Virus record (IMG/VR): IMGVR_UViG_3300036766_000988
Span: 186,001-250,000 of that record
Reading direction: 5' to 3' (one strand)
DNA: 64,000 nucleotides
Part shown: positions 1-29,988 of the stretch, in pieces
How positions within the stretch are numbered: the first letter of the stretch is position 1
Layout of the letters: every line of letters starts with the position of its first letter
Program-made: the position numbers and the translations under genes
The notes under the pieces: model-generated
What the model was told of the DNA's origin: nothing
The model's input: the letters and a program-made list of their open reading frames with translations, nothing else
The model's database searches: none

Positions 1-1691
1 GTACCATAGAGTTTCAGGAGCTTCGAGGCCATTTTCGGGCCGAAGCCGGGGACACCGGGGATGTTGTCAGACGTATCACCGTCGATGGCTCGGAAATGGA
101 CCATCCTGTCCGGCGTCGTCCCGTATTCCTTCTCGACCAGTGCGGCGTTGTAGAGCTTCTCTTTGCCCGCCCCCACGGCAGGAACCCACACCTGATCTGT
201 GGCTGAAACGAGCTGCAAAAAGTCCCGATCTGTCGAGATAACGACGTTTTGCTGACCTCGGTACGCCCCTCGGACGAGCGTCGCCACGACGTCATCGGCC
301 TCTTCCTCGACGTTCCACGCCTGCTTGATCCCGAGCAAGGGGAGGGTTTCGCGAAGCCAGTGGAACTGATCCCACTCGTCGTGAGCTGGGTAGAACGTCC
401 GCCCCCGAAGACGATTCGCCTTATAGGACGTAAACATTCGGGTCCGCCGCTGGCTCGACCCGTCCCATACGACGGTGATCTTTCCCCCTGGGAAGCGTTT
501 GAGGAACGAGCCGAGGCTCCGGAGAAAGCCGACGATGGCCCCCGTAGGACGGCCCTTCGAGTCCTTGAGCGTATCCAATCCAGGGCTCATGGAGCATCGA
601 ACTGCGAGGTTGTGGCCGTCGATGATGATGTTGTCGGTCATGGTCTTTCCCAAAAGGGTCCTCTCGATGGCCTCTACTTCATCATTCAGCACGGCAACTT
701 TGCCGAGCATCTCCTCAAACCACATCCACTTGAGGTACTGCGCTTCGATCGTCGCAAGCCTGTAGGAGGGCGGCGTGAAGAGAGGCAGGATTCCCAGTAG
801 ACGGTCTGCCCACCGGTGAAGCACCTCGAAGGATCGGAAGTTTTCTCGTATCGGGGTGGGGTCGAGCTGCTTTTCGGCAGCCTTCACCATCCCCACCAAT
901 TGGGTACCTCGCTGGTACCATCCGTGAAGCTTGTGCGCTGCTACGAAGGCACGAGCCACGGGGCGTGCATCCAAAGGTTCCCGCTCGACCACCTGTAGCT
1001 CGGCTTGCAACCCCAGCTCTTTGGCGATCCACCCGTCAAACTGATCCACGATCTGGAACCGTTGTCGGATCGGAACGATGCGGGCGTCGTCGAAGAGCAC
1101 GAAGGGCTTGACCTTCTTGAGCCAATCCCGGAGCGCCGCCAGCCTGGGCAGGAAGCTCGTTCGAGGAGCCTTCTCGACGAGCCGTAGGAATGACCTCGGT
1201 AGGGTGACGATCGACTCCTTGGAACGGAGTTTCACGTGGATCTGAACGCTTAGGTTCTCGGGGATGTCCTCGATGACCACCGCTCGGATTTGACGGTAGG
1301 GCCCGCTGGTGACTAGCACCGTATCGCCGACGTCAATTCCTTGGTCTTCCTTGTCGTGGATCTGGGACTTGAACCGGTCGATATCGGCATCGGTCGCGCA
1401 CGCAAGCTTCCTGACGGCACGGTAGCCTGAGCGGTCGATCTTGGTGATGACCGATTGCACGTAGCGGGAGCCTTCGAGCTTGTAGTACTTCTCGTCCGGC
1501 TGGGCGCGCTTGATGAAGGCGTACCCATCCACGAGGTAGTTGATCAGCCGATCCTCTCCCACGTTGGTCACCGACACGGGGAGGTAGATCTCGGCGTCCC
1601 GTATCTGATGCCGAATCGAGGCCCGAATGAAGTCGGGATCTTCGCCCTCAGCCTTCGGACTCAGCTCAAGAACAACCCATTCGTTCGCCAC
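1..1691 (-). CDS. NusG/RfaH-like (NGN+KOW) domain fused in frame to a 5'-3' exonuclease (FEN/PolA N-terminal family); truncated at window edge
   Basis: Manual translation from GTG at 1691: EWVVLELS...EIYLP...YLVDGYAFI...IDVGDTVLVTSGPYRQIRAVV (KOW). No stop before the in-frame Met at 641 (1050 nt downstream), then IIDGHNL...VVWDG...YKANR...EEADDVVATL...ISTDRDFLQL...GDTSDNIPGVPGFGPKMA. Confidence 0.85.
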   Translation of the reverse strand, partial: MANEWVVLELSPKAEGEDPDFIRASIRHQIRDAEIYLPVSVTNVGEDRLINYLVDGYAFIKRAQPDEKYYKLEGSRYVQSVITKIDRSGYRAVRKLACATDADIDRFKSQIHDKEDQGIDVGDTVLVTSGPYRQIRAVVIEDIPENLSVQIHVKLRSKESIVTLPRSFLRLVEKAPRTSFLPRLAALRDWLKKVKPFVLFDDARIVPIRQRFQIVDQFDGWIAKELGLQAELQVVEREPLDARPVARAFVAAHKLHGWYQRGTQLVGMVKAAEKQLDPTPIRENFRSFEVLHRWADRLLGILPLFTPPSYRLATIEAQYLKWMWFEEMLGKVAVLNDEVEAIERTLLGKTMTDNIIIDGHNLAVRCSMSPGLDTLKDSKGRPTGAIVGFLRSLGSFLKRFPGGKITVVWDGSSQRRTRMFTSYKANRLRGRTFYPAHDEWDQFHWLRETLPLLGIKQAWNVEEEADDVVATLVRGAYRGQQNVVISTDRDFLQLVSATDQVWVPAVGAGKEKLYNAALVEKEYGTTPDRMVHFRAIDGDTSDNIPGVPGFGPKMASKLLKLYG

Positions 1692-1692
1692 G

Positions 1693-3219
1693 TTACCCCC
1701 GTCCTGGCCAGGTACGCTCGAACTCCCGACGCCATTCGTCTGGCATGAGTACCCTGAGATCTGCATCTTGGTTTGGATCCGAGGTGAAGATCACCTGGGT
1801 CGGCTGATTGCTTCGTCCCCGAGCCTTCTCCAACGGGACGGTCTTGTGGTCAAGTTCTGTGAGCGCTTCGACATCACTGGACCCGAGAGAACCAATGCCG
1901 TCGGGGCGCAAACCCCGTCCAACGGGCTTCGGAGGCTGAACCGGTGCAGCCGTTACCACGGGGGGAGTAGCAGGAGCAGAGGCCACAGGAGCAGTTTGCA
2001 CGACGGGGCCCGTAGAAGTCCCCCCAGGGGCGGTCGTGACCCCTTCCGTCGGAGCTGGGCCGGATACCATGGGTCCAGCGGGTTCGCTTGTCACCACGGC
2101 TTCAGAAGGCGGCCCAGACACGATTGTCTGGGCCGGAGGCGACATGGGGCCTGCCACCTGGATGATCACGGAAGAGGCCTGGGGACTAGGAATACCGCCA
2201 GCGAGATTCAAGACATCGCAGATGAGGCTCACTTTGGTCGCATATCGAGTTCGCAGGAAGTATTCCGCGAGCTTGATGCACCCGACACCGTAGCGTTCCC
2301 AAAGTTGCTGTCCGAGAGCCCGGTCGACGTAGACGAACTCCGCGAACATGCCGTTGGCGAGTCGAAAGCTGTTCATGGCAGCTTCGGCCAACCCCGCCGA
2401 CACTTCCTCGGCACTCACCCGCTCGATAGCCTGTTCAATGAGGCTAATGGCTCGCTTGGAATCCCCCAGTGCGAGTAGGATTTCGTAGTAGGTCGCCACG
2501 ACATTGAGGTGCAGGTACTCCCGCACGCTCTTGAGGGTGACGTCTCCTGCTTGCGCGATCATCTCCAGCCGGTTGACCACATCACGCACGTGGCCGCCCG
2601 AGTAGTCGATGACCGTCAAGACAGCATCGTCTTCGTGGTAGACTTCCTCGGCGTTGAGGATCTTCTTCATCCGCACCAGCACGTCTTCTCGTGTGATCTT
2701 GCGGATTGCGTATTCCTCGCACCTGGAACGAATCGGGCCTCGGATCTTCTCCGGCTCTGTCGTACAGAAGATCCCCACCATCTTCTTGTCTTCGAGGGGC
2801 TTGAGCAAGACGTCTTGCGCGTCTTTGGACATCCTGTGCGCTTCGTCGAAGACGTAGACTCGCTTCGGTGCGTTGAAGACCGCGAAAGGTAGGTCGTCCA
2901 CGATGGCGCGAACGTGCTCTATGGTCCCTCGGCTAGCGGCGTCCTGTTCGACGTACGCTCCGGAGGTCTCGGCAAGGACGTCGCGACAGTTCTCACACTC
3001 GTTGCAAGGTTCGGGGTTGGCCTTGTTGAGATTCATGCAGAGCATCGCTCGTGCAAGGATCCTGGCAAGGGTTGTCTTCCCTTGCCCATGCCCACCTGAG
3101 AACACGTAGTTCGTGTCCAAAGCGGTATCCTTCGCGAGACGTGCCTTGAGTAGAAGGACGGCGCCCTCCTGCCCAAGCACGTCTCCGAAGGTCATAGGCC
3201 TATATTTGGTGTCCCACAC
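1693..3219 (-). CDS. dnaX: DNA polymerase III subunit gamma/tau (clamp loader)
   Basis: KYRP..F.DVLGQ, Walker A GGHGQGKTT, Zn module PCNECENC, Walker B DEAH, SRC, Pro-rich C-terminal linker; GTG start after GGAGG. Confidence 0.93.
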   Translation of the reverse strand: MWDTKYRPMTFGDVLGQEGAVLLLKARLAKDTALDTNYVFSGGHGQGKTTLARILARAMLCMNLNKANPEPCNECENCRDVLAETSGAYVEQDAASRGTIEHVRAIVDDLPFAVFNAPKRVYVFDEAHRMSKDAQDVLLKPLEDKKMVGIFCTTEPEKIRGPIRSRCEEYAIRKITREDVLVRMKKILNAEEVYHEDDAVLTVIDYSGGHVRDVVNRLEMIAQAGDVTLKSVREYLHLNVVATYYEILLALGDSKRAISLIEQAIERVSAEEVSAGLAEAAMNSFRLANGMFAEFVYVDRALGQQLWERYGVGCIKLAEYFLRTRYATKVSLICDVLNLAGGIPSPQASSVIIQVAGPMSPPAQTIVSGPPSEAVVTSEPAGPMVSGPAPTEGVTTAPGGTSTGPVVQTAPVASAPATPPVVTAAPVQPPKPVGRGLRPDGIGSLGSSDVEALTELDHKTVPLEKARGRSNQPTQVIFTSDPNQDADLRVLMPDEWRREFERTWPGRG

Positions 3220-3221
3220 GA

Positions 3222-3635
3222 TTAGGCCTCCGAGCGCCGCTGCTTTATTTCGTAGAAAGTACGTGCATCGTCCGTGTCTTTCCACTCTTGGTCAGGGATG
3301 CACCGGATCCAGGAGCTGAAGAACTCTCCGGCTTCTACGAGGAGCTTGTCTCCCGCGCACTCGATTTCGACCAGACCGGGATAGCCACGGATGTTCTCGT
3401 TGACGGAGCTGAATCCGCCTCTTTCCCGAGCTGCCAAGATCTCCGTCACATAAGACACGGTGCCCGGTTGACAGAACTTGATGATCCGTGGGTGCTTGGA
3501 GGCCTCCACGTTCTCTTGTTCGGTAGGCGGCCGGACCCGAACCCACAGGTTTCCCTTCTTCATCGACGAGCGTCGAGAATTGTGGGCCTGTACGAACTTG
3601 CGGACATCCTCCGCAAAAGCGTGTTCAGGAGGCAC
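3222..3635 (-). CDS. hypothetical protein
   Basis: 137-aa ORF tightly packed in the operon. Confidence 0.6.
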   Translation of the reverse strand: MPPEHAFAEDVRKFVQAHNSRRSSMKKGNLWVRVRPPTEQENVEASKHPRIIKFCQPGTVSYVTEILAARERGGFSSVNENIRGYPGLVEIECAGDKLLVEAGEFFSSWIRCIPDQEWKDTDDARTFYEIKQRRSEA

Positions 3636-3640
3636 GGGGA

Positions 3641-4120
3641 TCAGGTCTGCCGCTGGGTGACTTCCTCGGTGACTTCGGCCGCGATCTCTTCGATGTTGAT
3701 CTGCTTGGCGACGGAGGCGAAAGCAGTGAGGTCATTGTTCCATGCCCCGTGTCGGCGAAGGATCGTGGCGAACTCCTGGACGTCGGGCTCGCGCATGGTC
3801 CACTTCATGGAGCTGTCTTCCTCGTTCTCTTCTCCCGTGCAGCGTTCGAGGAGATGGTCGACGAGAGCCGAGCGCTGTTGCTCGCTCATGTCGTTCCACT
3901 GATCCATACCGACTTCGAGCATGAAGTCGGAGTCGAGTAGAAACTCCAGAACGCCGGAAACCTTGCGAACCTTCCCAGGGACCGGCTTGCCATTCTTGAT
4001 GGAGGCCTTGTCCACGAACACGTACTTCACCCGAGCCGTCGCCAGCTCGGGGTGGTACATGGGGATGAGGTTCTTGGCAATGGCCTCGACAGACTCCGCG
4101 CTACCGTAGACTTTGGGCAT
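3641..4120 (-). CDS. phage putative metallopeptidase-like protein (degenerate HExxH)
   Basis: HPELATARVKYVF...W..MSEQQRSALVDHLLERC...DVQEF...RRHGAW pattern. Confidence 0.6.
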   Translation of the reverse strand: MPKVYGSAESVEAIAKNLIPMYHPELATARVKYVFVDKASIKNGKPVPGKVRKVSGVLEFLLDSDFMLEVGMDQWNDMSEQQRSALVDHLLERCTGEENEEDSSMKWTMREPDVQEFATILRRHGAWNNDLTAFASVAKQINIEEIAAEVTEEVTQRQT

Positions 4121-4838
4121 TATGGGTCTCCATGTCGTCCGAACCCAATTGAGTTCGGAGGTACTCCTGGAACCGAACATCCCCCCAAGTTTCCCAGAGG
4201 TCTCCTGGGTCCTTGGTGAGCTTGTCGGTCCCGATCATCGGGACAGTGGGATACGAGATAGTCCGTATACCAAATTCGTGACCGTGACTCTCCCTAAAAC
4301 GCTTCGAGACTCTCCGGCCGGTCTCATCCGCATCATATCCGAGCCAAATCCGCTCTACAAGACGTCGTAGGATGCGGAGGAAAGGTTCGGTCACCCTTGC
4401 CGTGAGCGTTGCGACGACTCCAGGGAAGACGCGCTGCACCGGGAAGAGGTCGAAACCGCCTTCGACGAGATACACCGAGCGTGTTGCCCAGACGTGGGGC
4501 ATCGCTTGAGCGAGCCCGAAAAGGACCGCCTCGTCCTTCCCCTCGATAAAGTCCATGTAGCCCGCGCGGTCTCTGGACACGTACCTGAACTGCACCCCAC
4601 GGATGGTGCCGATCGTGTTCGTCAGAGGCAGGACCAGAACATCGTCGAGCTTGGCCCCTCCATCCGACCACTTGAGGAAGGCCTGGGGGTAGTCCGCATC
4701 GGGCAGCTCTTTGTTGAGGTACCCGAGACCGTACGTAGCGATCTGCTGTTCGGACACGCCTCTAGCAGAGAGGGCGTCGAGAACTCTTTCGTTCAGGCGT
4801 CCGCAAGCGCCTGTCGTCAGATCATCGAGCCACGTCAT
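4101..4838 (-). CDS. DnaG-type primase catalytic core (Toprim), no zinc-binding domain
   Basis: RG.S.....YGLGY, LFGL, VYLVEGGFD, LGYDADETG, KDPGD motifs. Confidence 0.8.
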   Translation of the reverse strand: MTWLDDLTTGACGRLNERVLDALSARGVSEQQIATYGLGYLNKELPDADYPQAFLKWSDGGAKLDDVLVLPLTNTIGTIRGVQFRYVSRDRAGYMDFIEGKDEAVLFGLAQAMPHVWATRSVYLVEGGFDLFPVQRVFPGVVATLTARVTEPFLRILRRLVERIWLGYDADETGRRVSKRFRESHGHEFGIRTISYPTVPMIGTDKLTKDPGDLWETWGDVRFQEYLRTQLGSDDMETHNAQSLR

Positions 4839-5403
4839 CGACCACCACCATGTTTTGGTCGATGCGTTGGAACAGCAGACCCAGATGGTCTTCGACGCGG
4901 GTGTAGATCCCGAGACGATCGGAACCCACGGTCACCAACGCCGCCCCCTTGGGTAGGTCTGACACGAGTACCTTCATCCCGTTCACCACTCCGGCAAACC
5001 CTTCTGGTACTGGCTCGCTCTTCCCTATCATCGCTGGGGCGTCGATCGCGGAGACGACGATCACCTTCGCTTCTAGGCCGAGACTTCGAAACCGGTCTAC
5101 GGCTGTCTGGATACCACTACACCGCAGCGGCCACTTCTGCTGCGTCCAAAGCCACTCGTAGAGACGGCGGAGCAGCCGGGGCTCTTCTTCGAAGGAACAC
5201 GGGGAGAAACCGAAGCGAGCGACCCCTGTACGGCTGGTGCTGGTGGGCAGGAAAACACCGCGAGCGTTGGTCGCCAACAGGGGGTCTTGGCCTTGATGGA
5301 GATCAACTTCTCCTAGGAGAGGGGCCTTGAAGTCTCCTCTCCGACCCTTGGGAGGAAGGAACCGCTCGGCCCTCAGCATGTGTTGGAACACAGAGGCGGG
5401 CAT
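4822..5403 (-). CDS. hypothetical protein
   Basis: ATG overlaps upstream stop (TGATG). Confidence 0.6.
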   Translation of the reverse strand: MPASVFQHMLRAERFLPPKGRRGDFKAPLLGEVDLHQGQDPLLATNARGVFLPTSTSRTGVARFGFSPCSFEEEPRLLRRLYEWLWTQQKWPLRCSGIQTAVDRFRSLGLEAKVIVVSAIDAPAMIGKSEPVPEGFAGVVNGMKVLVSDLPKGAALVTVGSDRLGIYTRVEDHLGLLFQRIDQNMVVVDDVAR

Positions 5404-5948
5404 CACGTGTCCTTCGGAGCTTCGAGGAGCTTGGCGATGTCGTAGCTCGGTTGTACCGGCTCGACCCGGATTCGAAGCATCCGATACCAAAGACGCTTCC
5501 ACCATGGGATCCGCACCTTGCTGACCTCTGTATCGAGCGCCCAAAAGAGACCGTACATCTCAGGCATGTGGCTGGACACCCACTCCACGTTCTCGACATC
5601 TCGCCGGAAATTCTCTTCGAGGGTCTCTTTGGTTTGGGTCGGCGTGAAGTAGGGGCACCTCTGTGCATCGATGGGGTCTTCGCAGATGTTGCCCTGCCAC
5701 TGATCGGGATGCTCAGCTCCCAACATGCAGAGCCCCATTGTCTGCACTACAGGAAGCCCCCGGGAATCAGCGACTCGGTTGAAGCTGTCGTTGGGAGATC
5801 CTTCCACCAATTTCCGTGTGTCGAGGGGTTGTTGGTGGTTGTGCGTGCAGAGATGAGGGAGACGACGAGATGCCTCGTCCACACGTCGATCTAGCTCCTG
5901 AACGAGCAGGAACCGGATACGATCTGTGATCTGGCTCTGGGTTTTCAT
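5403..5948 (-). CDS. hypothetical Cys/His-containing protein
   Basis: ATGA overlap with upstream gene; HLCTHNH and further Cys residues. Confidence 0.6.
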   Translation of the reverse strand: MKTQSQITDRIRFLLVQELDRRVDEASRRLPHLCTHNHQQPLDTRKLVEGSPNDSFNRVADSRGLPVVQTMGLCMLGAEHPDQWQGNICEDPIDAQRCPYFTPTQTKETLEENFRRDVENVEWVSSHMPEMYGLFWALDTEVSKVRIPWWKRLWYRMLRIRVEPVQPSYDIAKLLEAPKDT

Positions 5949-6640
5949 CGTGCGCCTCGCATTCGACGAAGACCGAGACTCCAAGAGCCGTTGGTCTCCT
6001 CAGTGACACTGTGACCCTGGTACGCTAGATCCGCGTGATCGAGAAAAGCTTGCTTCTGAGAGACGTATAGGATGTGGATCCCTGTCGTCGCAGCGAGCTT
6101 CTTCAAGAACTGTCCGGCCGCGTCGATGTATTCGTCGCCGTTGATCGCCCCCAAGGTCTCATCGAGGAACAGAACAGGGGCACGTTTCAGACGAAGGATC
6201 GCAAGGAGTCGCAGCACCAAAGACGCAATGCTGGACGGGCCCCCTCCGAACGATTCCAGAGGGTGCCCTCGAACCGCCATCGTCTCACTCCCCTGGCGGA
6301 AGAAAAAGTCGATGGCGACCTTGTTGTACTTCTGCGAGATCTCGGCTTCGAACGTGAGTTGCTGGTCGAAGAAAATCGCCCGTAGCCCTTCGGTGACGAT
6401 CCCCTCGATCGTCCGTACCTGATCGGTGACGAGCTTGTCCATCAGGACCCGGAGAAGTTCTCCGACTTTGGTGAGACGTTCGATCTGACGCGATAGGGCT
6501 TCGACCTCCCGCTGCTTACCCTCCAGGTCACCCACGATCTGATCGCGGATGGCCTGGATTCGAGCTGCGTTTCGGTTGAGGGTCTGGACCCGTCGGCGCC
6601 AGGTCAGTCCTTGCTGGGCATGAAGCGCGTCACCCGGCAC
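5945..6640 (-). CDS. SbcC/Rad50-like ABC ATPase, C-terminal half
   Basis: Short coiled coil, signature-like SFGGG, Walker B VLFLDE; no Walker A. Confidence 0.8.
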   Translation of the reverse strand: MPGDALHAQQGLTWRRRVQTLNRNAARIQAIRDQIVGDLEGKQREVEALSRQIERLTKVGELLRVLMDKLVTDQVRTIEGIVTEGLRAIFFDQQLTFEAEISQKYNKVAIDFFFRQGSETMAVRGHPLESFGGGPSSIASLVLRLLAILRLKRAPVLFLDETLGAINGDEYIDAAGQFLKKLAATTGIHILYVSQKQAFLDHADLAYQGHSVTEETNGSWSLGLRRMRGAR

Positions 6641-7917
6641 TTGCTACCACCTTCCGGACGCTTCTCGTTGCCAGCCTCGTCCTTCTCGGTGGAGGAGCCC
6701 CCGATGACCTTCCCTTCGTTGTTCATCCAGAACTCGTCGATCGTGCGGAACATCGCCGCACCTTTCGGACGCCTGTCATCCGGCGGCACCGTGAGCACGC
6801 GGAACAAGACCTCGTGTCCCTTCAAGTCACCGATCAGCTCGATGAGCTGTGTGATGTTGAGGTTGTACTGGAAGTCCTTCTCCTCCGCGAGCTGGACCTC
6901 GACCGGTACCGGGAAGGCTCCGGTCTTGGATCCCCCATCACTGGCGGTGAAGTAGAGCTTCTTCTCCGACGCCTTGTATTGAATGTGGATCTTGTCGCGG
7001 TTCGTTTCGAGCCCTGAACGCGTGAAGTTGAGAGCGTTCATGAGCGTGACCTTGGCCATACGGAAGACGTACTGGTCGTGCTTGAGCGGCAGGTAGGAGT
7101 ACTTCGAATGCGTCTTCGAGTGAAAGGCCCAACCGAAGACCTGCTCGCCCTCGACATTCCCTTCCTTGTTCTTGATCTCGTTGGCAGCGAACATCATGTG
7201 CTTGCCGTGGCGGATCTCGACCGGCCCCTCGCATTTGCTGAGGAAGGCCCCCAGCCGATCGAGGTGGGCGCCGTGAATGGCAACCCCGTCGTTCTTGAAG
7301 GCCTCCGAATAGAACCAGAAGGCCTTGGTACCATTCGTCGCGTACATGTTGCCGTTGCCCTTGGCCCATGCCTCGTTCGTCTCGTCGAAGATCTGCACCG
7401 TTTTGAGGTGGTCTTCGGCGCGGGTGTCCTTCGCATCGGCGATGAATTTCTTCGAGAGGCTGATCGCCTCACGTAGGATCCCCGCAGCGAACGTCTTCTT
7501 CTGCCCCGCGGCCTCGAAGTCGTCGTCGATTGGCGAGATGAACCTCGGGTCGAACGACATCATCTCCTTGTGAGCTTCGCTCGTCGACTTGAACTGCACT
7601 GCGTAGTCGGGGCCTTCCGTCTTCACGTCGAAGTCGATCTCGTCGTCAGGGATGTACTGGATCCCGGCGAGAAGCATGGGGGGTGCGATGAACGACCCCT
7701 CGCCATCGAGTTCGAGGAGCTTGATGTCCGCCCTGGCGACCTCGGTCTGGTCCCGTGAGTAGACGTGGCATCGGGGAAGCCCATCCTTCAAGTACGCCTT
7801 GAAGAGATAGCCTGCACCCCCTTGAGTCGTAACCGGACTCGGAGTGACGTTGCCGACGATGTTGAGAGCCCTGATGAGATCGGCAGCCTTGAGCTTGAAG
7901 CGCATGTTCATCCTCAT
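6604..7917 (-). CDS. DNA sliding clamp (beta/DnaN-like), divergent
   Basis: MRFKLKAADLIRAL..V N-terminus, ATNG (cf. ATDG), NITQLIELI; clamp-loader genes in the same block. Confidence 0.65.
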   Translation of the reverse strand: MRMNMRFKLKAADLIRALNIVGNVTPSPVTTQGGAGYLFKAYLKDGLPRCHVYSRDQTEVARADIKLLELDGEGSFIAPPMLLAGIQYIPDDEIDFDVKTEGPDYAVQFKSTSEAHKEMMSFDPRFISPIDDDFEAAGQKKTFAAGILREAISLSKKFIADAKDTRAEDHLKTVQIFDETNEAWAKGNGNMYATNGTKAFWFYSEAFKNDGVAIHGAHLDRLGAFLSKCEGPVEIRHGKHMMFAANEIKNKEGNVEGEQVFGWAFHSKTHSKYSYLPLKHDQYVFRMAKVTLMNALNFTRSGLETNRDKIHIQYKASEKKLYFTASDGGSKTGAFPVPVEVQLAEEKDFQYNLNITQLIELIGDLKGHEVLFRVLTVPPDDRRPKGAAMFRTIDEFWMNNEGKVIGGSSTEKDEAGNEKRPEGGSKCRVTRFMPSKD

Positions 7918-10559: not shown

Positions 10560-11918
10560 CTACACCCGCTGCTCGTGTCCCCCGGCATGAAAAGGCTGGG
10601 TACACGTTGGGCAAACTCCGAGGGCATCCCACTCGGCCTGGATGGCAACTCCATCGGTCTCGATCCCACGGTATTGATCCGTGAGAGTCGCCACTAGGGT
10701 GGTGAGTGCTTGATATCTTCTAGCAAGCCCCTCCAGACCTTCGAATGTTCTCGATGTCTCCGAGAGCTTCTCTGGCAACAGGGCGGACCCATTTGCTTCG
10801 ATCACCTCGTACAACTCGGTAAGAGCTGTCATCAAGCGTGTCACAGCTTGGTACCGCACTGCTAGTCGTTCGAGGCTTTCGTAGGACTCCAAGGATTCGG
10901 AGAGCTTTCCCGGTGCCAGCTCGGGGGAGGCATCGAGGGCCTTCGTACGCTCCAACCACGCCTTGAAGATACGAAGCTTGGCGATCCACCCCTCCAATGC
11001 CTCGAAGGTGGCTGCATGCGAACGCAGGGAATCTGGTTCGGGGGCAGAAACCGTCTCGATGGCTTGCAAAGCTTGAACGGCGGTCACGCGCTCGGTCCAC
11101 TGGGTGAGAAACCGAATCATCTGCGCGTGATTCTTCGACACGTCCGCAAGGGGGTTTGAATCAGGAGCTTGAAGGGCCATCACCGCTTCGAGGGCTGCCA
11201 CATGCTGCCCAAGAGCCGCCGCCCGTTCTAGGAACTTCTCGATGTTGAGGAGCTTCGTTTCTGCTGCCTCAACACTATCGAGCTGATCCTCAATATCCCG
11301 TACATTGGCTAGCGCCGTGTCCAGCCCATCGAAAAGGACAACCCTCCTGGTGAGGTCTGCGATGTCTTGTTCCCGCACTTTACGGGTCGAGGAGGCCTCT
11401 TTACGATCCTTCTCGGAGAGCCGGGTCGCGATGTTCACCCGATCCAGGTGGGCCACATCCGAGAGTACGTCAGCGACAACCCCGCCCGTCTGGTTCAAGA
11501 GGAAGATGGGATCGAACTGGTCCGCTACCTGTAGTAGTTCCTTGTCTTCGCCGATCTTCACCAAGGAGTAGATCGGCTGCAAGAAATCTGGGGTTCCACG
11601 TTCGGCCTTATCGTAGACCTTGCCATTGAACGTGTAACGGTTGATGGCGTCGCCCTTCTCCCAGAGGAGATCGAACGTCTCCGATCGGAGATGCACGGAG
11701 CAAAAGCACTTGCAGGTCTTGGCGCTCTTGACCTTCCTCGGACAGTCGGGAGAGTGGCGAACAAAAGAGGTCGAAGGCGCTCCCGTGAGGGCAGCTTTCA
11801 CTGCCCTCACGACCGCCGACTTACCGATGTTGCTACGCCCCACCAGGGCGGTGAAGCCCTGGATTTGAATTGCAGCGTGCTCAATCGACTGGAAGTTTCG
11901 AACCTCTACGTCGATCAC
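10560..11918 (-). CDS. SbcC/Rad50-like ATPase, N-terminal half ending at zinc hook
   Basis: VRNFQSI, Walker A GRSNIGKS, long coiled coil, terminal CPTC. Confidence 0.85.
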   Translation of the reverse strand: MIDVEVRNFQSIEHAAIQIQGFTALVGRSNIGKSAVVRAVKAALTGAPSTSFVRHSPDCPRKVKSAKTCKCFCSVHLRSETFDLLWEKGDAINRYTFNGKVYDKAERGTPDFLQPIYSLVKIGEDKELLQVADQFDPIFLLNQTGGVVADVLSDVAHLDRVNIATRLSEKDRKEASSTRKVREQDIADLTRRVVLFDGLDTALANVRDIEDQLDSVEAAETKLLNIEKFLERAAALGQHVAALEAVMALQAPDSNPLADVSKNHAQMIRFLTQWTERVTAVQALQAIETVSAPEPDSLRSHAATFEALEGWIAKLRIFKAWLERTKALDASPELAPGKLSESLESYESLERLAVRYQAVTRLMTALTELYEVIEANGSALLPEKLSETSRTFEGLEGLARRYQALTTLVATLTDQYRGIETDGVAIQAEWDALGVCPTCTQPFHAGGHEQRV

Positions 11919-13486
11919 CCCGCATCCCCGTCCCCATCTCCATCGAGAGCGCTGAGATCGGCCGCATCTTCCGCGTCGATCACCGTCTCGGAGGGCTTGG
12001 CCTCTGTCCCTTCCTCGTCGTCACCGAAGGCATCAGACAGATCTTCGAGGATCGCGTCCTCTGCGGACAGCTCCTCATCCGAGATGGCAGTCGGAGCTTG
12101 CGCGATGAGGGCTTCGGAAACCTGGGCCTTCACCTCTTCGAAGACTGCGGTATTGGAGAGCAGGTACGCGCGGAACTTGTCTCGGCTCTGGATGCGTTCG
12201 TTGCCGTACGAGTAGTACGCCCCATCCCGCTTGACGACTCCCGTGGCGACCCCCGACTCGATGACCGAATAGATGTCGTCCACACCGTAGCCATAGCGAA
12301 TGAAGATGTTCGCCGAGTGCCCTTGCTTTGCGTCGGCCTTCGACTTCACCATCTTGATCGCAGTGACGTTGCCATAGGGGAACTTCTTCTTCTTGCCTGT
12401 GGCCATGTCCTTGCGCTCGATCATCTCCGACGAGATACGAGCGAGCCGCAGACGAACGTAGGCGAAGTACTTGAGAGCCTTGCCGCCCGCCGTGTTGGGC
12501 TCGGGGGCACCGTGACCACCGCCCGTCGAAATCGTAGCGCGTTCCTGATTGAGGAAGATGAGGGCCGTGCCCTTGGCGTCCTTGCGGGGCTTCTTGTTCT
12601 CGCCCGTCCCTTCCATCGGGTGCTTCATGAGCCAGAGAGCGAACTTGGGTAGGGTCTCGCTCATCTTCTTTGCGACGGCGCCGATCTTGGCCACATCGTC
12701 GATCTTCTTCTCCAGCTCGTCCTTCGGGACCATGGCGGCGATGGAGTCGACGATGATGAGATCGACTCCAGATGCGATGCCGACGAACATCGCCTTGAAG
12801 CCCTCTTCCATCGTATCGGGAGCAGCGAGCGTCCACGTGTCGTCGAATTTGACCCCGATCTGCTTTGCGTACCCGTGGTGGATGGCGTGCTCGAAGTCGA
12901 GGTACAGAACGGAACCTCCACGGCGCTGCACATCGGCCGCAGCCGCAAGAGCCACCGTGGTCTTACCGCTCGACTCAGGTCCGTAGATCTCGGTGATCTT
13001 CCGACGCGGGTAACCCGGGCATACAGAGCCCTTGCCGTCTTGGGTCTTCGATCCTCCGATGAGGTTGTTGATGATGATCGACCCCGACGGTACGTGGGCC
13101 ATCGTGCTCATTGCCGTCTCGACCGGCTTGATACCGATCTTGTTGAGCATCGAACGCATGAGCGAAGCGGTCTGAGAACCCTGCGATGCAGAAGTCTTGA
13201 CGGTCTTCGCTGCGGGTTTGGCTGCGGGCTTGGCAACCGCAGGAGGCGCCGCCACAGGTTTGGCTGCCACAGGCGTGGCAACAGCGGTCTTGGCCGCCAC
13301 GGGCTTGGGAGGAAGCTCCTTCAGAGCTTCGGGCTTTGCCGCACTGGTCTTCTTCGCGTAGCAGGCTTCACACTCAAGCCGTAGCCCATCTTTGGCTCTC
13401 TTGTCTGGGCCGAACGGCCCAGAGCCCCCACATGCTGTGCAGGTCTTCGTTGCAGTGCTGTCCGTGTTCTTGGGATCGATAGTCAT
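11915..13486 (-). CDS. recA: RecA recombinase with N-terminal zinc ribbon and Pro/Ala/Lys linker
   Basis: EIYGPESSGKTT, IVDSIAA, IFLNQER, GGKALKYFAYVR; acidic tail. Confidence 0.92.
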   Translation of the reverse strand: MTIDPKNTDSTATKTCTACGGSGPFGPDKRAKDGLRLECEACYAKKTSAAKPEALKELPPKPVAAKTAVATPVAAKPVAAPPAVAKPAAKPAAKTVKTSASQGSQTASLMRSMLNKIGIKPVETAMSTMAHVPSGSIIINNLIGGSKTQDGKGSVCPGYPRRKITEIYGPESSGKTTVALAAAADVQRRGGSVLYLDFEHAIHHGYAKQIGVKFDDTWTLAAPDTMEEGFKAMFVGIASGVDLIIVDSIAAMVPKDELEKKIDDVAKIGAVAKKMSETLPKFALWLMKHPMEGTGENKKPRKDAKGTALIFLNQERATISTGGGHGAPEPNTAGGKALKYFAYVRLRLARISSEMIERKDMATGKKKKFPYGNVTAIKMVKSKADAKQGHSANIFIRYGYGVDDIYSVIESGVATGVVKRDGAYYSYGNERIQSRDKFRAYLLSNTAVFEEVKAQVSEALIAQAPTAISDEELSAEDAILEDLSDAFGDDEEGTEAKPSETVIDAEDAADLSALDGDGDGDAG

Positions 13487-14139
13487 GAGGTACCATCCAT
13501 CAATTTGGAAAACCGATAGAATCGAGAGTTCTCTTTGAAGATCGCCCCACAATACACCGTCTCGCCTGCCCGTTCCCCTCTCTTGAGAGTGCGTACCTTC
13601 GCGAATGCTCGATACTCGGACGGTGTGAGGTCGTCGTTGGTGATCTTCTCGTCGAGGCGTAGGAAGAACCGCGCAGCAAACCTCGCCACGTGGTAAGCGT
13701 CCGCCTCATTGTGGTTGAACCGGCCCGTGATACCCGTATCGACTTTCGCTGCCGCTACCATGTCGGCTTTGAACATCTTGCCTTTACGGGCCTTCGGATC
13801 GAGCTTCGCTAGCATCTTCACAGTGCCGGGGTCGAAGTACACGACATCCTTGCGGTGCGTGTAGACCACCTCGTTTGTGTAGACGAAAAGCGCGTAGGCA
13901 CCGGGCGACCATTGCTCGCCGTAAACCGGGGATTCGATGCCTATACACTCGACTTCAGGATGATCCGCGAGGAGCTTCGTCAGCATGTCGCGAAAGTCCA
14001 TGTACCGTTTGACGAAGACCGTTTTGGCCGACGTCGAGAACAGGCCTTTCGCTAGAATGCGTGCGGGTCCCTCGGCCTCCGAATCATGAATGCACCAGCC
14101 GTAGCCAGTGATCGATGGGTCGAATCCAAGTGAGATCAT
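13483..14139 (-). CDS. RuvC-like Holliday junction resolvase
   Basis: LGFDPSITGYG, IGIE, NEADAY. Confidence 0.8.
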   Translation of the reverse strand: MISLGFDPSITGYGWCIHDSEAEGPARILAKGLFSTSAKTVFVKRYMDFRDMLTKLLADHPEVECIGIESPVYGEQWSPGAYALFVYTNEVVYTHRKDVVYFDPGTVKMLAKLDPKARKGKMFKADMVAAAKVDTGITGRFNHNEADAYHVARFAARFFLRLDEKITNDDLTPSEYRAFAKVRTLKRGERAGETVYCGAIFKENSRFYRFSKLMDGTS

Positions 14140-18745: not shown

Positions 18746-19024
18746 TCAGACCTCGCTCAAGTTGTCGGCACGGAACTCATCGATCGAGTGTCCGCCCATC
18801 TGCCAGAGAGCACCCTGGATAAAGCAGAGCCAGCGCACCGCCTTGTCGGGGTTCGCCACTGCGTTGTTCTTCGCTTCGATGACCATCCAGTAGAGATGCC
18901 CTAGGCTTTCGGCCTGAGAGGGATTGCGGCCATCGACCGGGAATCGAAACGGTCGGACCCCAGGCCTGAGTTCGAAGATAGCCGCGTAGCGATTGAGTGC
19001 TTTGATGATTTGGTCTGCGGTCAT
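18746..19024 (-). CDS. hypothetical protein
   Basis: MTADQIIKAL start with ATGA overlap and GGAG RBS. Confidence 0.65.
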   Translation of the reverse strand: MTADQIIKALNRYAAIFELRPGVRPFRFPVDGRNPSQAESLGHLYWMVIEAKNNAVANPDKAVRWLCFIQGALWQMGGHSIDEFRADNLSEV

Positions 19025-20943
19025 GACTCCACCATCTTGAGGAGATCGTCCTCGGTGATGCACTTCGTCCCGTTCTTGGCCGCTGCTTTGGCCTTCGTCG
19101 ATCCCGATGCGGGGTCCGCCATCACGAGGTACGTAAGCCCCTTGCCTACGCTGGTCTTCACGATCCCGCCGTGCTCGGCAACGATGGCTTCGAGGTCGCT
19201 TCGCTTCCGCACACTCTTGCCGGTAAAACAGAACGAAAAGCCAGTCAGGTTGCCCTGGATCGGGGCCTTGATCTTGACCCCGGCTTTGAGCATCCCCGGC
19301 ACGACAGTCCTGCCAACCTCTTCGACCCATTTCCAGAGGGCCTTCGCCTTGATCGGCCCGAGCCCAGGAACGGTCTCGAATTGCTGCTCGGAACAGCCTT
19401 GGATCTTCTCCCACGTGTCGTATCCAGCATCCATGACCATGCGGATTGTCGATGACGCGCAGAGCGGGATGGAGAGCGCCCCCAGAAGGGTTTCGAGCGG
19501 CAGCTCGTTCTTTTCCCAGAGGAGCCCGAGGAGCTTGTCTGCCAAAGTCTCGGTGATACGCTCGACTTCCGAGAGACTCGGGATGTTGAGCTGGTAGAGA
19601 TCGGCGGGGGTTTTGACCTTCCCGCTGGTCACCAAGCGCTCGATGAGGGTCTCCCCCCACTCCTTTACGTCAAGGGCCGCGATGTACCGCTGGATGCGCC
19701 CCATAGCCTGAGCAGGGCACCCGGCTGTGTTGGGACAGACGAGGTACTCCCCGTCGACCGTGAGGGCGGCTTTGCACGAAGGGCACTCTTCGGGAAAGTC
19801 GTAGTCCCCATCCGCTTCCTCGATCACCTGCGTGACCCTGGGGATGACATCGTTGGCCCGTGCCACCAGGATCCGGGATCCCACCAAGATCCCCAGGTCT
19901 TGGATGTACTTCATGTTGTAGAGGCTTGCGTTCGTGACCTCTGCTCCTACGAGCTGCACAGGATCGAACACAGCAACCGGCGTGATCCGACCCGAGCCCC
20001 CCACCTGCCAGAGGATGTCACGCAGGATCGTCTCACGAGCGACCGCAGCAAACTTGAACGCCACAGCCCCCTTGGGCCGCCCATCCTTCTCCCCGAGCGC
20101 GAGCTGCCGTTCGAAACTGTTGACGGAGAACACGAGCCCGTCGATGTCGTAGTTGAGCGTTTCGCGCATCCCCTCTTGGTAGTCCAATCGGATCGTCTCG
20201 GGAGTCGCCCCACCGGATTGCATCACGGTGACACATGAATTGGGGAGCTTGAACCCCTGGTGAGCAAGCCACTCGAATTGCTGCGCCTCGGTCGAGAAAT
20301 CCTTCCCGTCGGCTACTCGATAGAAGAGCACCGTCAAGTGCTCGCATCCCTTGCCGTCGTACCGCTTCGAGGTACCGGCAGCAGTGTTCCGTGTGTTGGC
20401 CTTGTCAGGGAAGTGCGCCGCATGATCCTGCTTCGTCAGGATGATCTCCCCACGAAGGCTTCCGGTGAACTTCTCGGGAAGCTGGGCCAGCACCCCCTTC
20501 ATCTTGGCGACGTTGGGGGTGATGTCCTCGCCCGTTGTCCCATCGCCACGCGTGATGGCTTGGGTGAAGACGCCGTTCACGTACCTGGCGTGGATCGAGA
20601 TCCCATCGAGCTTCTCGCTCATGAAGAGGGCCTCGATGTCGGAGATGCCGTTGCCCACAGCCCAAACCCCCAGCTCCTCGGGGGTGTTCACCTTGTCGAG
20701 AGAGCCCATCGGGATGCCATGCCGGACCTTCGGCCACTCCGAGGTGGCGGGTACGGGGGCGCCGATGGCCGTGACGGCAGGGGCATCTGCTTGCAGCTCG
20801 CGAAGCTCGTCCACCCAGGCATCGAACACTTCGTCGGTGGTCGTCGGGACCCCGTTGAAATAGTCGAGCCGAGCTTGGTTGATCTGGGCTTGGAGCTTTT
20901 GGATCCGAGCGTCGTTTGCCGCTGCCATCATCTCTTCGAGCAC
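19021..20943 (-). CDS. ligA: NAD-dependent DNA ligase
   Basis: SEKLDG, RGDG, DIDGLV, Zn finger CPSC..C..C, C-terminal BRCT (FCFTG). Confidence 0.95.
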   Translation of the reverse strand: MLEEMMAAANDARIQKLQAQINQARLDYFNGVPTTTDEVFDAWVDELRELQADAPAVTAIGAPVPATSEWPKVRHGIPMGSLDKVNTPEELGVWAVGNGISDIEALFMSEKLDGISIHARYVNGVFTQAITRGDGTTGEDITPNVAKMKGVLAQLPEKFTGSLRGEIILTKQDHAAHFPDKANTRNTAAGTSKRYDGKGCEHLTVLFYRVADGKDFSTEAQQFEWLAHQGFKLPNSCVTVMQSGGATPETIRLDYQEGMRETLNYDIDGLVFSVNSFERQLALGEKDGRPKGAVAFKFAAVARETILRDILWQVGGSGRITPVAVFDPVQLVGAEVTNASLYNMKYIQDLGILVGSRILVARANDVIPRVTQVIEEADGDYDFPEECPSCKAALTVDGEYLVCPNTAGCPAQAMGRIQRYIAALDVKEWGETLIERLVTSGKVKTPADLYQLNIPSLSEVERITETLADKLLGLLWEKNELPLETLLGALSIPLCASSTIRMVMDAGYDTWEKIQGCSEQQFETVPGLGPIKAKALWKWVEEVGRTVVPGMLKAGVKIKAPIQGNLTGFSFCFTGKSVRKRSDLEAIVAEHGGIVKTSVGKGLTYLVMADPASGSTKAKAAAKNGTKCITEDDLLKMVES

Positions 20944-27934: not shown

Positions 27935-29988
<2,054 letters not shown>

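What the first reader, a model, noticed from the sequence alone, without database searches (positions are those of the whole stretch)
1..1691. NusG/Spt5-like transcription factor fused in frame to a 5'-3' exonuclease
Seen: one uninterrupted minus-strand ORF from GTG 1691 to the window edge. It has an NGN-like segment and a KOW motif (about 175 aa), a helical linker (about 175 aa), and then a FEN/PolA-type 5'-3' nuclease starting at the in-frame Met 641. The ORF track omits it because no stop falls in the window, which also argues against an internal stop. Established: NusG binds RNA polymerase, and eukaryotic torpedo termination couples Spt5 with a 5'-3' exonuclease (Xrn2/Rat1, a different gene family). 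Inference: an RNAP-tethered nuclease for termination, R-loop or primer removal, or host shut-off. An alternative is a recent loss of a stop codon, since Met 641 has a purine-rich upstream stretch (GGGAAAG).
Basis: partly seen in the sequence, partly recalled or inferred. Interest (0 to 1): 0.85.

Follow-up and report, generated by a model that had tools for sequence, protein, structure and literature searches.

The report
Phage NusG factor fused to flap nuclease
An uncultured huge-phage lineage encodes one protein joining a NusG-type RNA-polymerase factor to a DNA polymerase I-type 5' flap nuclease, a conserved architecture I found described in no paper and which probably links transcription with DNA replication or repair.

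Summary
Window 1..1691 (-) is an open frame of 563 codons. It is the first 563 residues of a 643-aa protein (P0001).

- **Residues 1-175:** a complete NGN+KOW NusG/Spt5 module, supported by profile and fold matches.
- **Residues 176-350:** an orphan arm of five long Trp-containing helices.
- **Residues 351-643:** a Pol I-type 5' nuclease (FEN) with every catalytic carboxylate invariant.

The fusion is not a recent stop-codon loss. 160 of 171 fetched relatives that carry the linker and/or the FEN, and 65 of 66 loci, have it in one ORF. These sit on IMG/VR phage contigs of up to about 530 kb. Only three hits occur among 185,579 prokaryotic species genomes.

Two split variants keep the halves adjacent with a 4-nt start/stop overlap. 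One of them is nested inside the fused clade. A sister clade has a stand-alone NusG-like gene of about 200 aa.

In all 82 loci that extend past it, the gene is followed by a sigma-70 region-4 gene. In nearly all it follows a DnaX-type clamp-loader gene, inside a clamp/primase/clamp-loader block.

Best reading, inferred and untested: a specialised phage NusG paralogue carries a flap/RNA-DNA-hybrid nuclease on transcribing RNA polymerase. No paper describes it. It is a new variant of a known kind.

The parts
1..1691 (-). NusG-like/FEN fusion gene. This is the window part, residues 1-563 of the 643-aa protein P0001. The last 80 codons and the stop lie beyond the window edge (L001:6001-7932).
   Evidence: Stop-free translation. 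Identical to the 643-aa P0001. Same single-ORF architecture in 65 of 66 related loci.
1392..1691 (-). NGN domain, residues 1-100. It carries the invariant motifs W5-V-x-L-E-L and G56-Y57-x-F59.
   Evidence: AF2 pLDDT about 90. Foldseek hits NusG/RfaH/Spt5 at probability 1.0. Pfam NusG PF02357 hits 6 of 31 family members. The GYaF motif aligns to GYVF of T. maritima NusG.
1167..1337 (-). KOW domain, residues 119-175, with the invariant R156-S157-K158 hairpin tip.
   Evidence: Pfam KOW E 3.8e-4 and 20.6 bits, just under the 22.3-bit cut-off. KOW hits 10 of 31 members. PDB NusG KOW 1nz9 and 2mi6 match. RSK aligns to F-G-R of T. maritima NusG.
642..1166 (-). Orphan helical arm, residues 176-350. 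It has five long helices, each with a conserved Trp (W190, 221, 257, 293, 321/323). Its length varies from about 100 to 200 aa among relatives.
   Evidence: AF2 helices 180-198, 206-235, 243-273, 279-305 and 312-344. Only noise hits in PDB profile, Foldseek and the ESM Atlas. Variable length shown.
3..641 (-). Pol I-type 5' nuclease (FEN), residues 351-563 within the window. Includes the N-terminal resolvase-like domain and the start of the H3TH/SAM fold. All active-site carboxylates are inside the window: D358, D410, E464, D466, D467, D488, D490, D539, D542.
   Evidence: Pfam 5_3_exonuc_N 1.4e-27 and 5_3_exonuc 6e-11. Taq Pol I 2.4e-28 with residue-by-residue alignment. Profile against Pol I 1.6e-45. 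Invariant columns listed.
1696..1700 (-). GGGGG ribosome-binding-like run before GTG 1691. The upstream gene's TAA stop lies at 1695-1693.
   Evidence: Read directly from the sequence.
1693..3285 (-). Upstream DnaX-type clamp-loader subunit (530 aa), probably translationally coupled to the fusion gene. A recognisable homologue was found in 79 of 82 related loci; most of the others are contigs cut short on that side.
   Evidence: Pfam DNA_pol3_delta2 1e-22. Synteny shown.
3641..7917 (-). Rest of the conserved block: phage metallopeptidase (3641-4180), Toprim primase (4101-4838), two unknown ORFs, an ATPase (5945-6640), and a sliding-clamp-like processivity factor (6604-7917).
   Evidence: Pfam and PHROG hits. 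The same order recurs in 47-65 of 82 loci; shorter contigs explain most of the rest.

Best explanation
**What it is.** This is a specialised, phage-encoded NusG paralogue whose KOW domain is followed by a helical arm of about 175 aa and an active Pol I-type 5' flap nuclease.

**Shown.**
- The domain identities.
- The intact nuclease active site.
- Long-term conservation of the single polypeptide in a lineage of huge uncultured phages.
- A fixed position between the clamp-loader gene dnaX and a sigma-70 region-4 gene.

**Inferred mechanism.** The NGN domain docks on the clamp helices of RNA polymerase, as every characterised NusG/Spt5 does. The polymerase is probably the host enzyme reprogrammed by the neighbouring sigma-4-like protein. 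The KOW domain then sits over the upstream DNA near the beta flap and RNA exit. The helical arm holds the nuclease within reach of the upstream fork. There the nuclease would cleave 5' flaps, or the RNA strand of RNA-DNA hybrids made by transcription on replicating phage DNA. Candidate substrates are R-loops and transcripts or primers left at transcription-replication encounters. The outcome would be to couple transcription with lagging-strand, recombination or repair processing.
For: **NusG identity.**
- Profile of 31 N-termini against the PDB: Thermotoga NusG at 2.4e-7 and 3e-6.
- AF2 model with pLDDT above 90 over residues 1-175.
- Foldseek: all 41 hits at E<=1e-3 are NusG/RfaH/Spt5, most taken from RNAP complexes.
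- NCBIfam nusG hit in 27 of 27 members, UpxY in 22, LoaP in 18.
- The invariant GY-x-F strand aligns with NusG GYVF. The homologous Tyr42/Leu44 pocket of archaeal Spt5 binds the RNAP clamp coiled-coil (PMC2896526).

**Active FEN.**
- Pfam hits.
- Taq Pol I alignment places D358, D410, E464, D466, D467, D488, D490, D539 and D542 on Taq D18, D67, E117, D119, D120, D142, D144, D188 and D191.
- All of these are invariant in 30 sequences.

**The fusion is real and old.**
- 259 hits to the N-terminal region. Nearly all of the 120 listed are 600-660 aa and carry the FEN Pfam domains.
- 160 of 171 relatives that carry the linker and/or the FEN are fused.
- 65 of 66 loci have a single ORF.
- One 100/100-supported branch separates fused from stand-alone forms.

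**The halves stay associated when split.** Split variants keep adjacency and a 4-nt overlap.

**Links to transcription and replication.**
- A sigma region-4 gene lies immediately downstream in all 82 loci. dnaX lies upstream in 79.
- One cluster, P0055, fuses all three.
- Clamp, primase and clamp-loader genes neighbour it.

**Geometry.** NGN contacts the clamp helices, and the RfaH KOW sits above the upstream DNA next to the beta flap (10.1101/324400).
Against: - No binding or nuclease data exist.
- The window's own protein scores below Pfam's KOW cut-off and has no direct Pfam NGN hit.
- Identity to cellular NusG is only about 15-21%.
- The KOW hairpin tip is invariant Arg-Ser-Lys instead of the Phe-Gly-Arg of NusG, so canonical partners such as S10 and Rho are unlikely.
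- Which RNA polymerase is used, host or phage, is unknown.
- The gene sits in a replication module, which fits a purely replicative FEN equally well.
- The linker is modelled with low confidence in the full-length model (pLDDT 45-70), so the reach of the arm is not established.
Confidence: 0.5

Rival explanations
1. It is a replisome FEN. The protein is simply the phage's Okazaki-fragment or primer-removal nuclease. The NGN-KOW-arm part has been repurposed as an adaptor to a replisome component such as the clamp loader, clamp, primase or SSB, or to DNA, and does not bind RNA polymerase.
For: - The gene is embedded in a conserved block of sliding-clamp-like, primase, DnaX, delta and delta' genes, with RecA, RecD2, ligase and SbcCD-like genes nearby.
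- It is probably translationally coupled to dnaX.
- The KOW tip differs from cellular NusG.
- The FEN is of the Pol I type that removes primers.
Against: - From my own knowledge, every characterised NGN domain binds RNAP. The motif that carries the RNAP-binding pocket is invariant here (PMC2896526).
- The stand-alone sister clade keeps NGN-KOW without any FEN, always next to a sigma region-4 gene. The module therefore has a FEN-independent role, plausibly in transcription.
- The candidate C-terminal clamp-binding motif turned out to be part of the nuclease fold.
Confidence: 0.2
2. It is a split-sigma or replication-coupled activator. The NusG-like NGN would occupy the beta' clamp helices, the site of sigma region 2. 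The neighbouring sigma region-4 protein would occupy the beta flap. Together they would replace or displace host sigma and drive phage middle or late transcription from replicating, nicked or flapped DNA. This is analogous to T4 gp55/gp33 with the gp45 clamp, with the FEN recognising the DNA discontinuities.
For: - NusG-like and sigma-4-like genes are adjacent in all 82 loci across both clades.
- A natural triple fusion exists, P0055.
- The sigma-4-like protein lacks any detectable region 2.
- Both genes lie directly after the clamp/clamp-loader genes.
- From my own knowledge, and as indexed in PMC12802917, NGN and sigma compete for the same RNAP site.
Against: - This is purely an analogy. No homology to gp55 or gp33 was shown.
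- No clamp-binding peptide was identified; the ILxAFF motif is structural.
- Gene adjacency may only reflect co-expression.
- P0055 is a single cluster on one 6-kb contig and could be a sequencing frameshift.
Confidence: 0.12
3. It is a torpedo-type terminator or RNA-degrading factor. The nuclease would load on the 5' end of nascent RNA and chase RNAP, like Spt5-Xrn2 or archaeal Spt5-FttA, or it would degrade host transcripts for shut-off.
For: - NusG/Spt5 pair physically with 5'-3' nucleases in eukaryotes (PMC11695829) and in archaea. The latter is seen in PDB 9bct, a top Foldseek hit.
- Tethering after the KOW domain puts the nuclease near the RNA exit.
Against: - The nuclease is closest to Pol I 5' nuclease, FenA and Xni. 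From my own knowledge, these act on DNA flaps and RNA-DNA hybrids and not on free single-stranded RNA.
- The genomic context is replication rather than RNA turnover.
- Nothing points to host shut-off.
Confidence: 0.08
4. It is an artefact or a recent accident: a lost stop codon or an assembly frameshift joined two separate genes in this contig.
For: Two-gene versions do exist (L009/P0092 and L084/P0105). An in-frame Met with a purine-rich stretch precedes the FEN.
Against: - The single ORF recurs in 160 proteins of 36-70% identity from many samples.
- The linker itself is conserved at HMM E values down to 8e-51.
- The one split form placed on the tree (L009) is nested inside the fused clade, so it is a secondary fission.
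- Met351 is not conserved.
Confidence: 0.01

Closest known systems
Bacterial NusG and its specialised paralogues (RfaH, LoaP, UpxY)
   Same: - Co-linear NGN then KOW architecture of about 175 aa.
- Profile and fold matches.
- The conserved GY-hydrophobic strand of the RNAP-binding pocket.
- Like the paralogues, it is an accessory copy carried by a mobile or foreign element.
   Different: - Scores are far below every NCBIfam equivalog cut-off: 24 bits for this protein against a cut-off of 135.7 bits for nusG.
- The KOW tip is Arg-Ser-Lys instead of Phe-Gly-Arg.
- It carries a C-terminal extension of about 470 aa with a nuclease.
- It is phage-encoded and lies between dnaX and a sigma-4-like gene. 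No ops-like recruitment site is known.
5' nuclease (FEN) domain of bacterial DNA polymerase I; stand-alone FenA/ExoIX(Xni); phage FENs (T5 D15, SPO1 gp32.85)
   Same: - Pfam 5_3_exonuc_N plus 5_3_exonuc.
- All metal-binding carboxylates and the H3TH motif.
- Best matches are Pol I 6vde at 1.6e-45 and Taq at 4.6e-41.
- About 35% identity to SPO1-like phage FENs.
   Different: It is attached at its N-terminus to NusG plus a helical arm, rather than at its C-terminus to a polymerase or standing alone. No relative in GenBank phages has the N-terminal part.
Spt5-Xrn2/Rat1 (eukaryotes) and Spt4/5-FttA/aCPSF1 (archaea) pairs
   Same: A NusG/Spt5 factor on the elongation complex works with a 5'-3' nuclease (PMC11695829; PDB 9bct is among the Foldseek hits).
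   Different: Those pairs are non-covalent. Their nucleases belong to other sequence families (XRN, beta-CASP), and they degrade RNA to terminate transcription. Here the link is covalent and the nuclease is a DNA-flap/hybrid enzyme.
Stand-alone phage NusG/RfaH-like proteins
   Same: Same NGN-KOW module. The sister clade (L064-L080 and LR745208.1) shares the dnaX - nusG-like - sigma-4 synteny. BFVD holds phage proteins of 146-241 aa named NusG or RfaH.
   Different: They have no linker and no FEN. LR745208.1 has no hit to the family's FEN or linker models anywhere in its 485 kb. Some have an acidic tail or another C-terminal domain instead.
T4 late-transcription machinery (gp55, gp33, gp45 clamp, gp44/62 loader)
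   Same: This is a functional analogy only. Small RNAP-binding factors are encoded with, and may be coupled to, the sliding clamp and its loader (own knowledge).
   Different: No sequence or fold relationship was demonstrated, and no clamp-binding peptide was found.

Membership tests
NusG/Spt5 family | NGN domain fold (alpha/beta, about 100 aa) at the N-terminus | tested here: met
   AF2 pLDDT about 90 over residues 1-115. All top Foldseek PDB hits are NusG/RfaH/Spt5 aligned over about 175-190 columns. Pfam PF02357 hits 6 of 31 family members. NCBIfam nusG hits 27 of 27. The window protein itself has no direct Pfam NGN hit.
NusG/Spt5 family | KOW domain following the NGN | tested here: met
   Pfam KOW at residues 121-152 with E 3.8e-4, at 20.6 bits against a 22.3-bit cut-off. 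KOW hits 10 of 31 members. PDB NusG KOW domains 1nz9 and 2mi6 match.
NusG/Spt5 family | Binding of the NGN hydrophobic pocket to the RNAP clamp helices or coiled-coil | not testable with these tools
   There is only indirect evidence. Invariant G56-Y57-x-F59 aligns with NusG GYVF. The corresponding Spt5 Tyr42/Leu44 are needed for RNAP binding (PMC2896526). The residue equivalence is my inference.
Housekeeping NusG (equivalog TIGR00922) | Score above the curated equivalog cut-off, and a KOW tip able to bind S10/Rho | tested here: not met
   23.9 bits against a cut-off of 135.7 bits. The tip is Arg-Ser-Lys rather than Phe-Gly-Arg. It is a paralogue, not an orthologue.
RfaH / LoaP / UpxY specialised paralogues | Membership of the curated subfamily, a recruitment element (ops-like), and for RfaH a fold-switching KOW | tested here: not met
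   Only weak sub-threshold hits: RfaH 18.5 bits against 144.5, with UpxY and LoaP matched by 22 and 18 members at best E 3.7e-8 and 1.6e-5. Recruitment sites and fold switching were not tested.
FEN / 5'-3' exonuclease family (Pol I N-terminal type) | N-terminal resolvase-like domain plus H3TH/SAM-fold domain | tested here: met
   PF02739 at 96.9 bits (cut-off 34.3). PF01367 at 43.1 bits (cut-off 40) even when truncated by the window. The full domain is present in P0001.
FEN / 5'-3' exonuclease family (Pol I N-terminal type) | Complete set of metal-binding carboxylates | tested here: met
   D358, D410, E464, D466, D467, D488, D490, D539 and D542 align to the Taq active-site residues. All are invariant in 30 homologues.
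FEN / 5'-3' exonuclease family (Pol I N-terminal type) | Structure-specific 5' nuclease activity | not testable with these tools
   This needs an enzyme assay.
XRN (Xrn2/Rat1) torpedo exoribonucleases | XRN N-terminal catalytic domains | tested here: not met
   There are no XRN hits in Pfam or PDB searches. The best matches are Pol I, FenA and Xni.

The most novel reading that the evidence does not exclude
The NusG-like protein and the invariably adjacent sigma region-4 protein may together form a bipartite substitute for sigma on host RNA polymerase. NGN would sit on the beta' clamp helices and sigma-4 on the beta flap. In the fused clade the attached flap nuclease would couple this transcription apparatus physically to replication intermediates such as nicks, flaps and R-loops. 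That would be a new, NusG-based form of replication-coupled phage transcription, or conversely of transcription-primed replication.
Probability: 0.15. Interest if true: 0.9.

Novelty: new variant of a known kind. Interest (0 to 1): 0.72.

Why it matters
NusG/Spt5 is the only transcription factor conserved in all cellular life. It works as a tether: its KOW domain recruits ribosomes, Rho or RNA-processing enzymes non-covalently.

A conserved covalent fusion of NusG to a DNA-flap/RNA-DNA-hybrid nuclease would be a natural 'hard-wired' example of recruiting a nucleic-acid-processing enzyme to RNA polymerase. The fusion is wedged between the clamp loader and a sigma-like factor in a widespread lineage of huge phages.

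It gives a concrete, testable handle on three questions:
- how large phages manage R-loops, primers and transcription-replication conflicts;
- what specialised NusG paralogues can evolve into;
- whether phages use NusG-like proteins together with partial sigma factors to take over host polymerase.

The protein could also be a useful tool, as an RNAP-targeted nuclease.

Tried and rejected
1. **Recent stop-codon loss or assembly artefact.** Rejected by conservation of the single ORF and by the tree.

2. **Internal translation start at Met351 as a conserved feature.** Rejected, because the Met is not conserved. It does coincide with the start codon of a split variant.

3. **C-terminal [DE]xxLxxFF as a PIP-box or clamp-binding peptide.**
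   - The motif is conserved.
   - By continuation of the profile alignment, it falls on the last helices of the Taq Pol I 5' nuclease domain. The alignment runs to Taq residue 273 and the envelope to 289.
   - It is a well-modelled helix (residues 629-636) at the end of the nuclease domain in the AF2 model.
   - I therefore dropped it as evidence.

4. **Identity of the 176-350 linker.** PDB profile search gave only LRR, spectrin and coiled-coil noise. Foldseek gave nothing beyond NusG. The ESM Atlas scored at most 0.40. The linker remains an orphan.

5. **Cultured or annotated relatives.** A DNA search of 8 kb against GenBank phages found nothing. tblastn of the N-terminus and of the sigma-4 protein found only the unannotated LR745208.1.

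6. **Literature.** Three full-text searches and two NusG reviews turned up no paper describing a NusG-nuclease fusion, or NusG in huge or jumbo phages. IMG's automatic name '5'-3' exonuclease/transcription antitermination factor NusG' shows that pipelines see both halves.

7. **A phage RNA polymerase.** Eight ORFs of 1146-1406 aa in the sister-clade genome LR745208.1 carry no RNAP domain. This scan is not exhaustive, and the seven largest ORFs, of 1677-3644 aa, were not scanned. The full 252-kb contig of the window could not be read.
Full report
**1.

Translating window 1-1691 on the minus strand gives 563 codons with no stop, starting at GTG 1691. The ORF lister omits it only because it runs off the window edge. 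At the window's 59% GC, I estimate the chance of 563 stop-free codons at about 5e-9.

The full product is in the protein collection as P0001, 643 aa and 100% identical. The same locus, including the missing 80 codons, was recovered from IMG/VR as L001, contig IMGVR_UViG_3300036766_000988 of 252,183 bp.

GTG 1691 sits one base after the TAA of the upstream gene. A GGGGG run lies five bases upstream of it. Homologue N-termini begin at the equivalent position. An in-frame ATG 75 nt further upstream is therefore unlikely to be the start.

**2. Domain anatomy**

*Residues 1-175: a complete NusG/Spt5 module.*
- The window protein alone gives only a sub-threshold Pfam KOW hit and a weak PHROG 'transcription antiterminator' hit.
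- A profile of 31 family N-termini matches Thermotoga maritima NusG at E 2.4e-7 across the NGN-KOW boundary.
- 6 of 31 members hit Pfam NusG and 10 of 31 hit KOW.
- All 27 tested members hit NCBIfam nusG. Many also hit UpxY, LoaP and RfaH. All scores are far below the orthologue cut-offs.
- The AlphaFold2 model has pLDDT above 90 here.
- All 41 Foldseek PDB hits at E<=1e-3 are NusG, RfaH or Spt5, mostly chains from RNA polymerase complexes.

*Residues 176-350: an orphan helical arm.* Five long helices each carry a conserved Trp. The segment has no detectable relative. Its length ranges from about 100 to 200 aa among homologues. This looks like a spacer built of repeats.

*Residues 351-643: a Pol I-type 5' nuclease.*
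- Pfam 5_3_exonuc_N at 1.4e-27.
- Taq Pol I at 2.4e-28.
- The family profile against mycobacterial Pol I at 1.6e-45, FenA at 3e-29, Xni at 1e-22 and T5 exonuclease at 8e-13.
- Every active-site carboxylate aligns to its Taq counterpart and is invariant in 30 homologues. These are D358, D410, E464, D466, D467, D488, D490, D539 and D542.
- pLDDT is above 90 in the full-length model.

**3. The fusion is conserved, not accidental**

- A search restricted to the N-terminal 350 residues found 259 proteins. Nearly all of the 120 listed are 600-660 aa and carry the FEN Pfam domains, at 36-70% identity. IMG's pipeline names several of them '5'-3' exonuclease/transcription antitermination factor NusG'.
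- Among 261 fetched family proteins, 160 have NGN-KOW plus FEN in one chain. Another 11 have NGN-KOW plus linker only, and 90 have NGN-KOW only.
- Among IMG/VR and genome loci of the close clade, 65 of 66 carry one ORF.
- The two-gene versions L009/P0092 and L084/P0105 end the first gene exactly at the end of the linker. They start the FEN gene with a 4-nt overlap.
- L009, the split form placed on the tree, is nested within the fused clade as sister to a fused sequence, with 100/97 support. It is therefore a secondary fission.
- An exhaustive HMMER pass over 1.84 billion cluster representatives with the NGN-KOW profile found 166 at E<=1e-30 and 345 at E<=1e-10.

**4. Who carries it**

- The loci lie on IMG/VR viral contigs, many of 100-530 kb.
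- A scan of one genome for each of 185,579 prokaryotic species found three hits, all on MAG contigs.
- GenBank phages hold no DNA match to this region.
- Only one protein-level relative of the N-terminus exists there, the unannotated 485-kb LR745208.1.
- The window itself is a replication and repair region. It holds DnaX-, delta- and delta'-like clamp-loader subunits, a sliding-clamp-like protein, Toprim primase, RecA, RecD2, NAD ligase, SbcCD-like genes, a PD-(D/E)XK nuclease, RuvC-like and RNR genes, and a phage metallopeptidase.

**5. Conserved synteny is the most informative new result**

All 82 loci that extend past the gene have a sigma region-4 gene immediately downstream. 79 have a recognisable DnaX-type gene upstream. 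The full block order, wherever the contig is long enough, is:

clamp-like - ATPase - two unknowns - primase - metallopeptidase - DnaX - [NusG-like, with or without FEN] - sigma-70 region-4 protein.

- The downstream gene lies outside the window at L001:7947-8573. It hits Pfam Sigma70_r4 at 3.9e-14 and follows the fusion gene's stop by 14 nt, with its own GGAGGG.
- The same triad holds for the sister clade, at 24-29% identity. There the NusG-like protein is about 200 aa and often ends in an acidic tail.
- It also holds for a variant with a different C-terminal domain, P0204/L086.
- One cluster, P0055 of 840 aa, reads through into the sigma-4 protein.
- In the complete sister-clade genome LR745208.1 the triad is present. 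Neither the FEN model nor the linker model finds anything, even at E<=10.
- A single 100/100 branch separates fused from stand-alone forms. Because cellular NusG is stand-alone, the linker-plus-FEN extension is most simply a gain in the fused clade. That direction is inferred; the tree is unrooted.

**6. Mechanism**

*Shown:* a NusG-family module, an intact FEN, their long-term covalent linkage, and their fixed place between a clamp loader and a sigma-like factor.

*Inferred:* the rest rests on established knowledge of the families.
- NGN domains bind the RNAP clamp helices through a hydrophobic pocket (PMC2896526; 10.1101/324400). The pocket-bearing GY-x-hydrophobic strand is invariant here and aligns with NusG's GYVF.
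- The RfaH KOW sits above the upstream duplex beside the beta flap (10.1101/324400).
- A nuclease attached after the KOW by a long helical arm would therefore be held near the upstream fork and the RNA exit.
- From my own knowledge, Pol I-type FENs cut 5' flaps and remove the RNA of RNA-DNA hybrids.
- I therefore favour, at about 0.5, an RNAP-borne flap/hybrid nuclease that processes R-loops, primers or flaps where transcription meets replication or recombination.

*A further difference from cellular NusG.* The KOW hairpin tip is invariant Arg-Ser-Lys where NusG has Phe-Gly-Arg. From my own knowledge, that Phe is the contact for S10 and Rho. Ribosome or Rho coupling is therefore unlikely, and a different partner or nucleic acid is implied.

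**7. Rivals**

- **Replisome FEN whose NGN-KOW is only an adaptor (0.2).** This fits the replication context. It does not explain the FEN-less sister clade or the invariable sigma-4 neighbour.
- **Bipartite sigma substitute or T4-like replication-coupled activator (0.12).** This is attractive because NGN and sigma region 2 share a binding site and sigma-4 binds the flap. It is analogy only. My candidate clamp-binding motif proved to be the terminal helix of the nuclease fold.
- **Torpedo terminator or host shut-off nuclease (0.08).** This is disfavoured by the nuclease type and the context.
- **Artefact (0.01).** Excluded by the comparative data.

**8. Novelty**

Phage NusG/RfaH-like proteins exist in databases as short stand-alone proteins. 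Automated pipelines label both halves of this protein. I found no paper describing a NusG-nuclease fusion, or NusG-like factors of huge phages.

I rate it a new variant of a known kind: a specialised NusG paralogue with a hard-wired FEN effector, set in a conserved dnaX - nusG-like - sigma-4 module.

**9. Limits**

- No biochemical test was possible.
- The RNA polymerase partner, host or phage, is unknown. A partial scan of the sister genome found no RNAP domain.
- The host is unknown.
- Only 64 kb plus 5 kb of the 252-kb contig could be read.
- The linker is modelled with low confidence in the full-length model.

Noticed in passing
L001:7947-8573 (just beyond the window's left edge): A sigma-70 region-4-only protein of about 208 aa immediately downstream. 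It has a very conserved N-terminal peptide (M-S-x-G-Y-V-I-P-V-D-P-x-E-L-A-N-R-F), an acidic stretch, what looks by eye like two HTH units, and a conserved C-terminus (F-N-I-L-R-E-V-K-L-P-Q-W). It is present in all 82 related loci. No sigma region 2 is detectable.
   Followed up: partly
P0055 (840 aa; one 6-kb JGI contig): A natural read-through fusion of NusG-like, linker, FEN and the sigma-4-like protein in one chain. It could be a real triple fusion or a sequencing frameshift.
   Followed up: partly
L064-L080; LR745208.1 420272-420946 (-): A sister clade of stand-alone phage NusG-like proteins of about 200 aa, in the same dnaX/sigma-4 synteny. Many end in acidic tails such as L-D-E-L-L or E-F-I-P-E-D. 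The complete 485-kb genome has no detectable Pol I-type FEN, and it has a second sigma-4 paralogue at 153829-154692.
   Followed up: partly
L086:5001-5972 (P0204) and similar proteins P0184, P0186, P0203, P0205, P0210: NusG-like proteins of about 320 aa carry a different C-terminal extension ending in a motif like G-L-W-x-L-T-x-x-G. From memory this may be winged-helix-like. The synteny is the same. This suggests the phage NusG module is a platform for swapping effector domains.
   Followed up: no
window 1693-3285, 23598-24566, 24566-25540 (all -): Three separate clamp-loader-type genes (DnaX-like, delta-like, delta'-like), plus a sliding-clamp-like gene at 6604-7917. Together these look like a near-complete bacterial-type clamp/loader set in a phage.
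   Followed up: partly
window 11915-13552 (-): A RecA homologue of 545 aa with an N-terminal extension of about 165 aa that has no Pfam match.
   Followed up: no
window 27935-29596 (-): A full-length GroEL/Cpn60-type chaperonin gene (Pfam 1.4e-66).
   Followed up: no
window 31848-33251 (-): An RtcB RNA ligase (Pfam 1.4e-88). No tRNA genes were found in the window.
   Followed up: no
window 45869-47011 (+), 53364-54335 (+), 40299-41036 (-): A radical-SAM enzyme, an ADP-ribosylglycohydrolase and a DNA methyltransferase-like gene. These are possible auxiliary or counter-defence functions.
   Followed up: no
window 18746-19660 (-) versus 19021-20943 (-): A 304-aa ORF overlaps the 5' part of the NAD-dependent ligase ORF by about 640 nt. 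The ligase adenylation domain starts only at residue 68, so the ligase start is probably further downstream than the longest ORF suggests.
   Followed up: no
P0023, P0026, P0008, P0013 (alignment A1, columns 517-560): Some fused homologues carry a long Gly/Asn/Ser/Ala-rich insertion in the region that, from memory, corresponds to the FEN helical arch through which 5' flaps thread.
   Followed up: no
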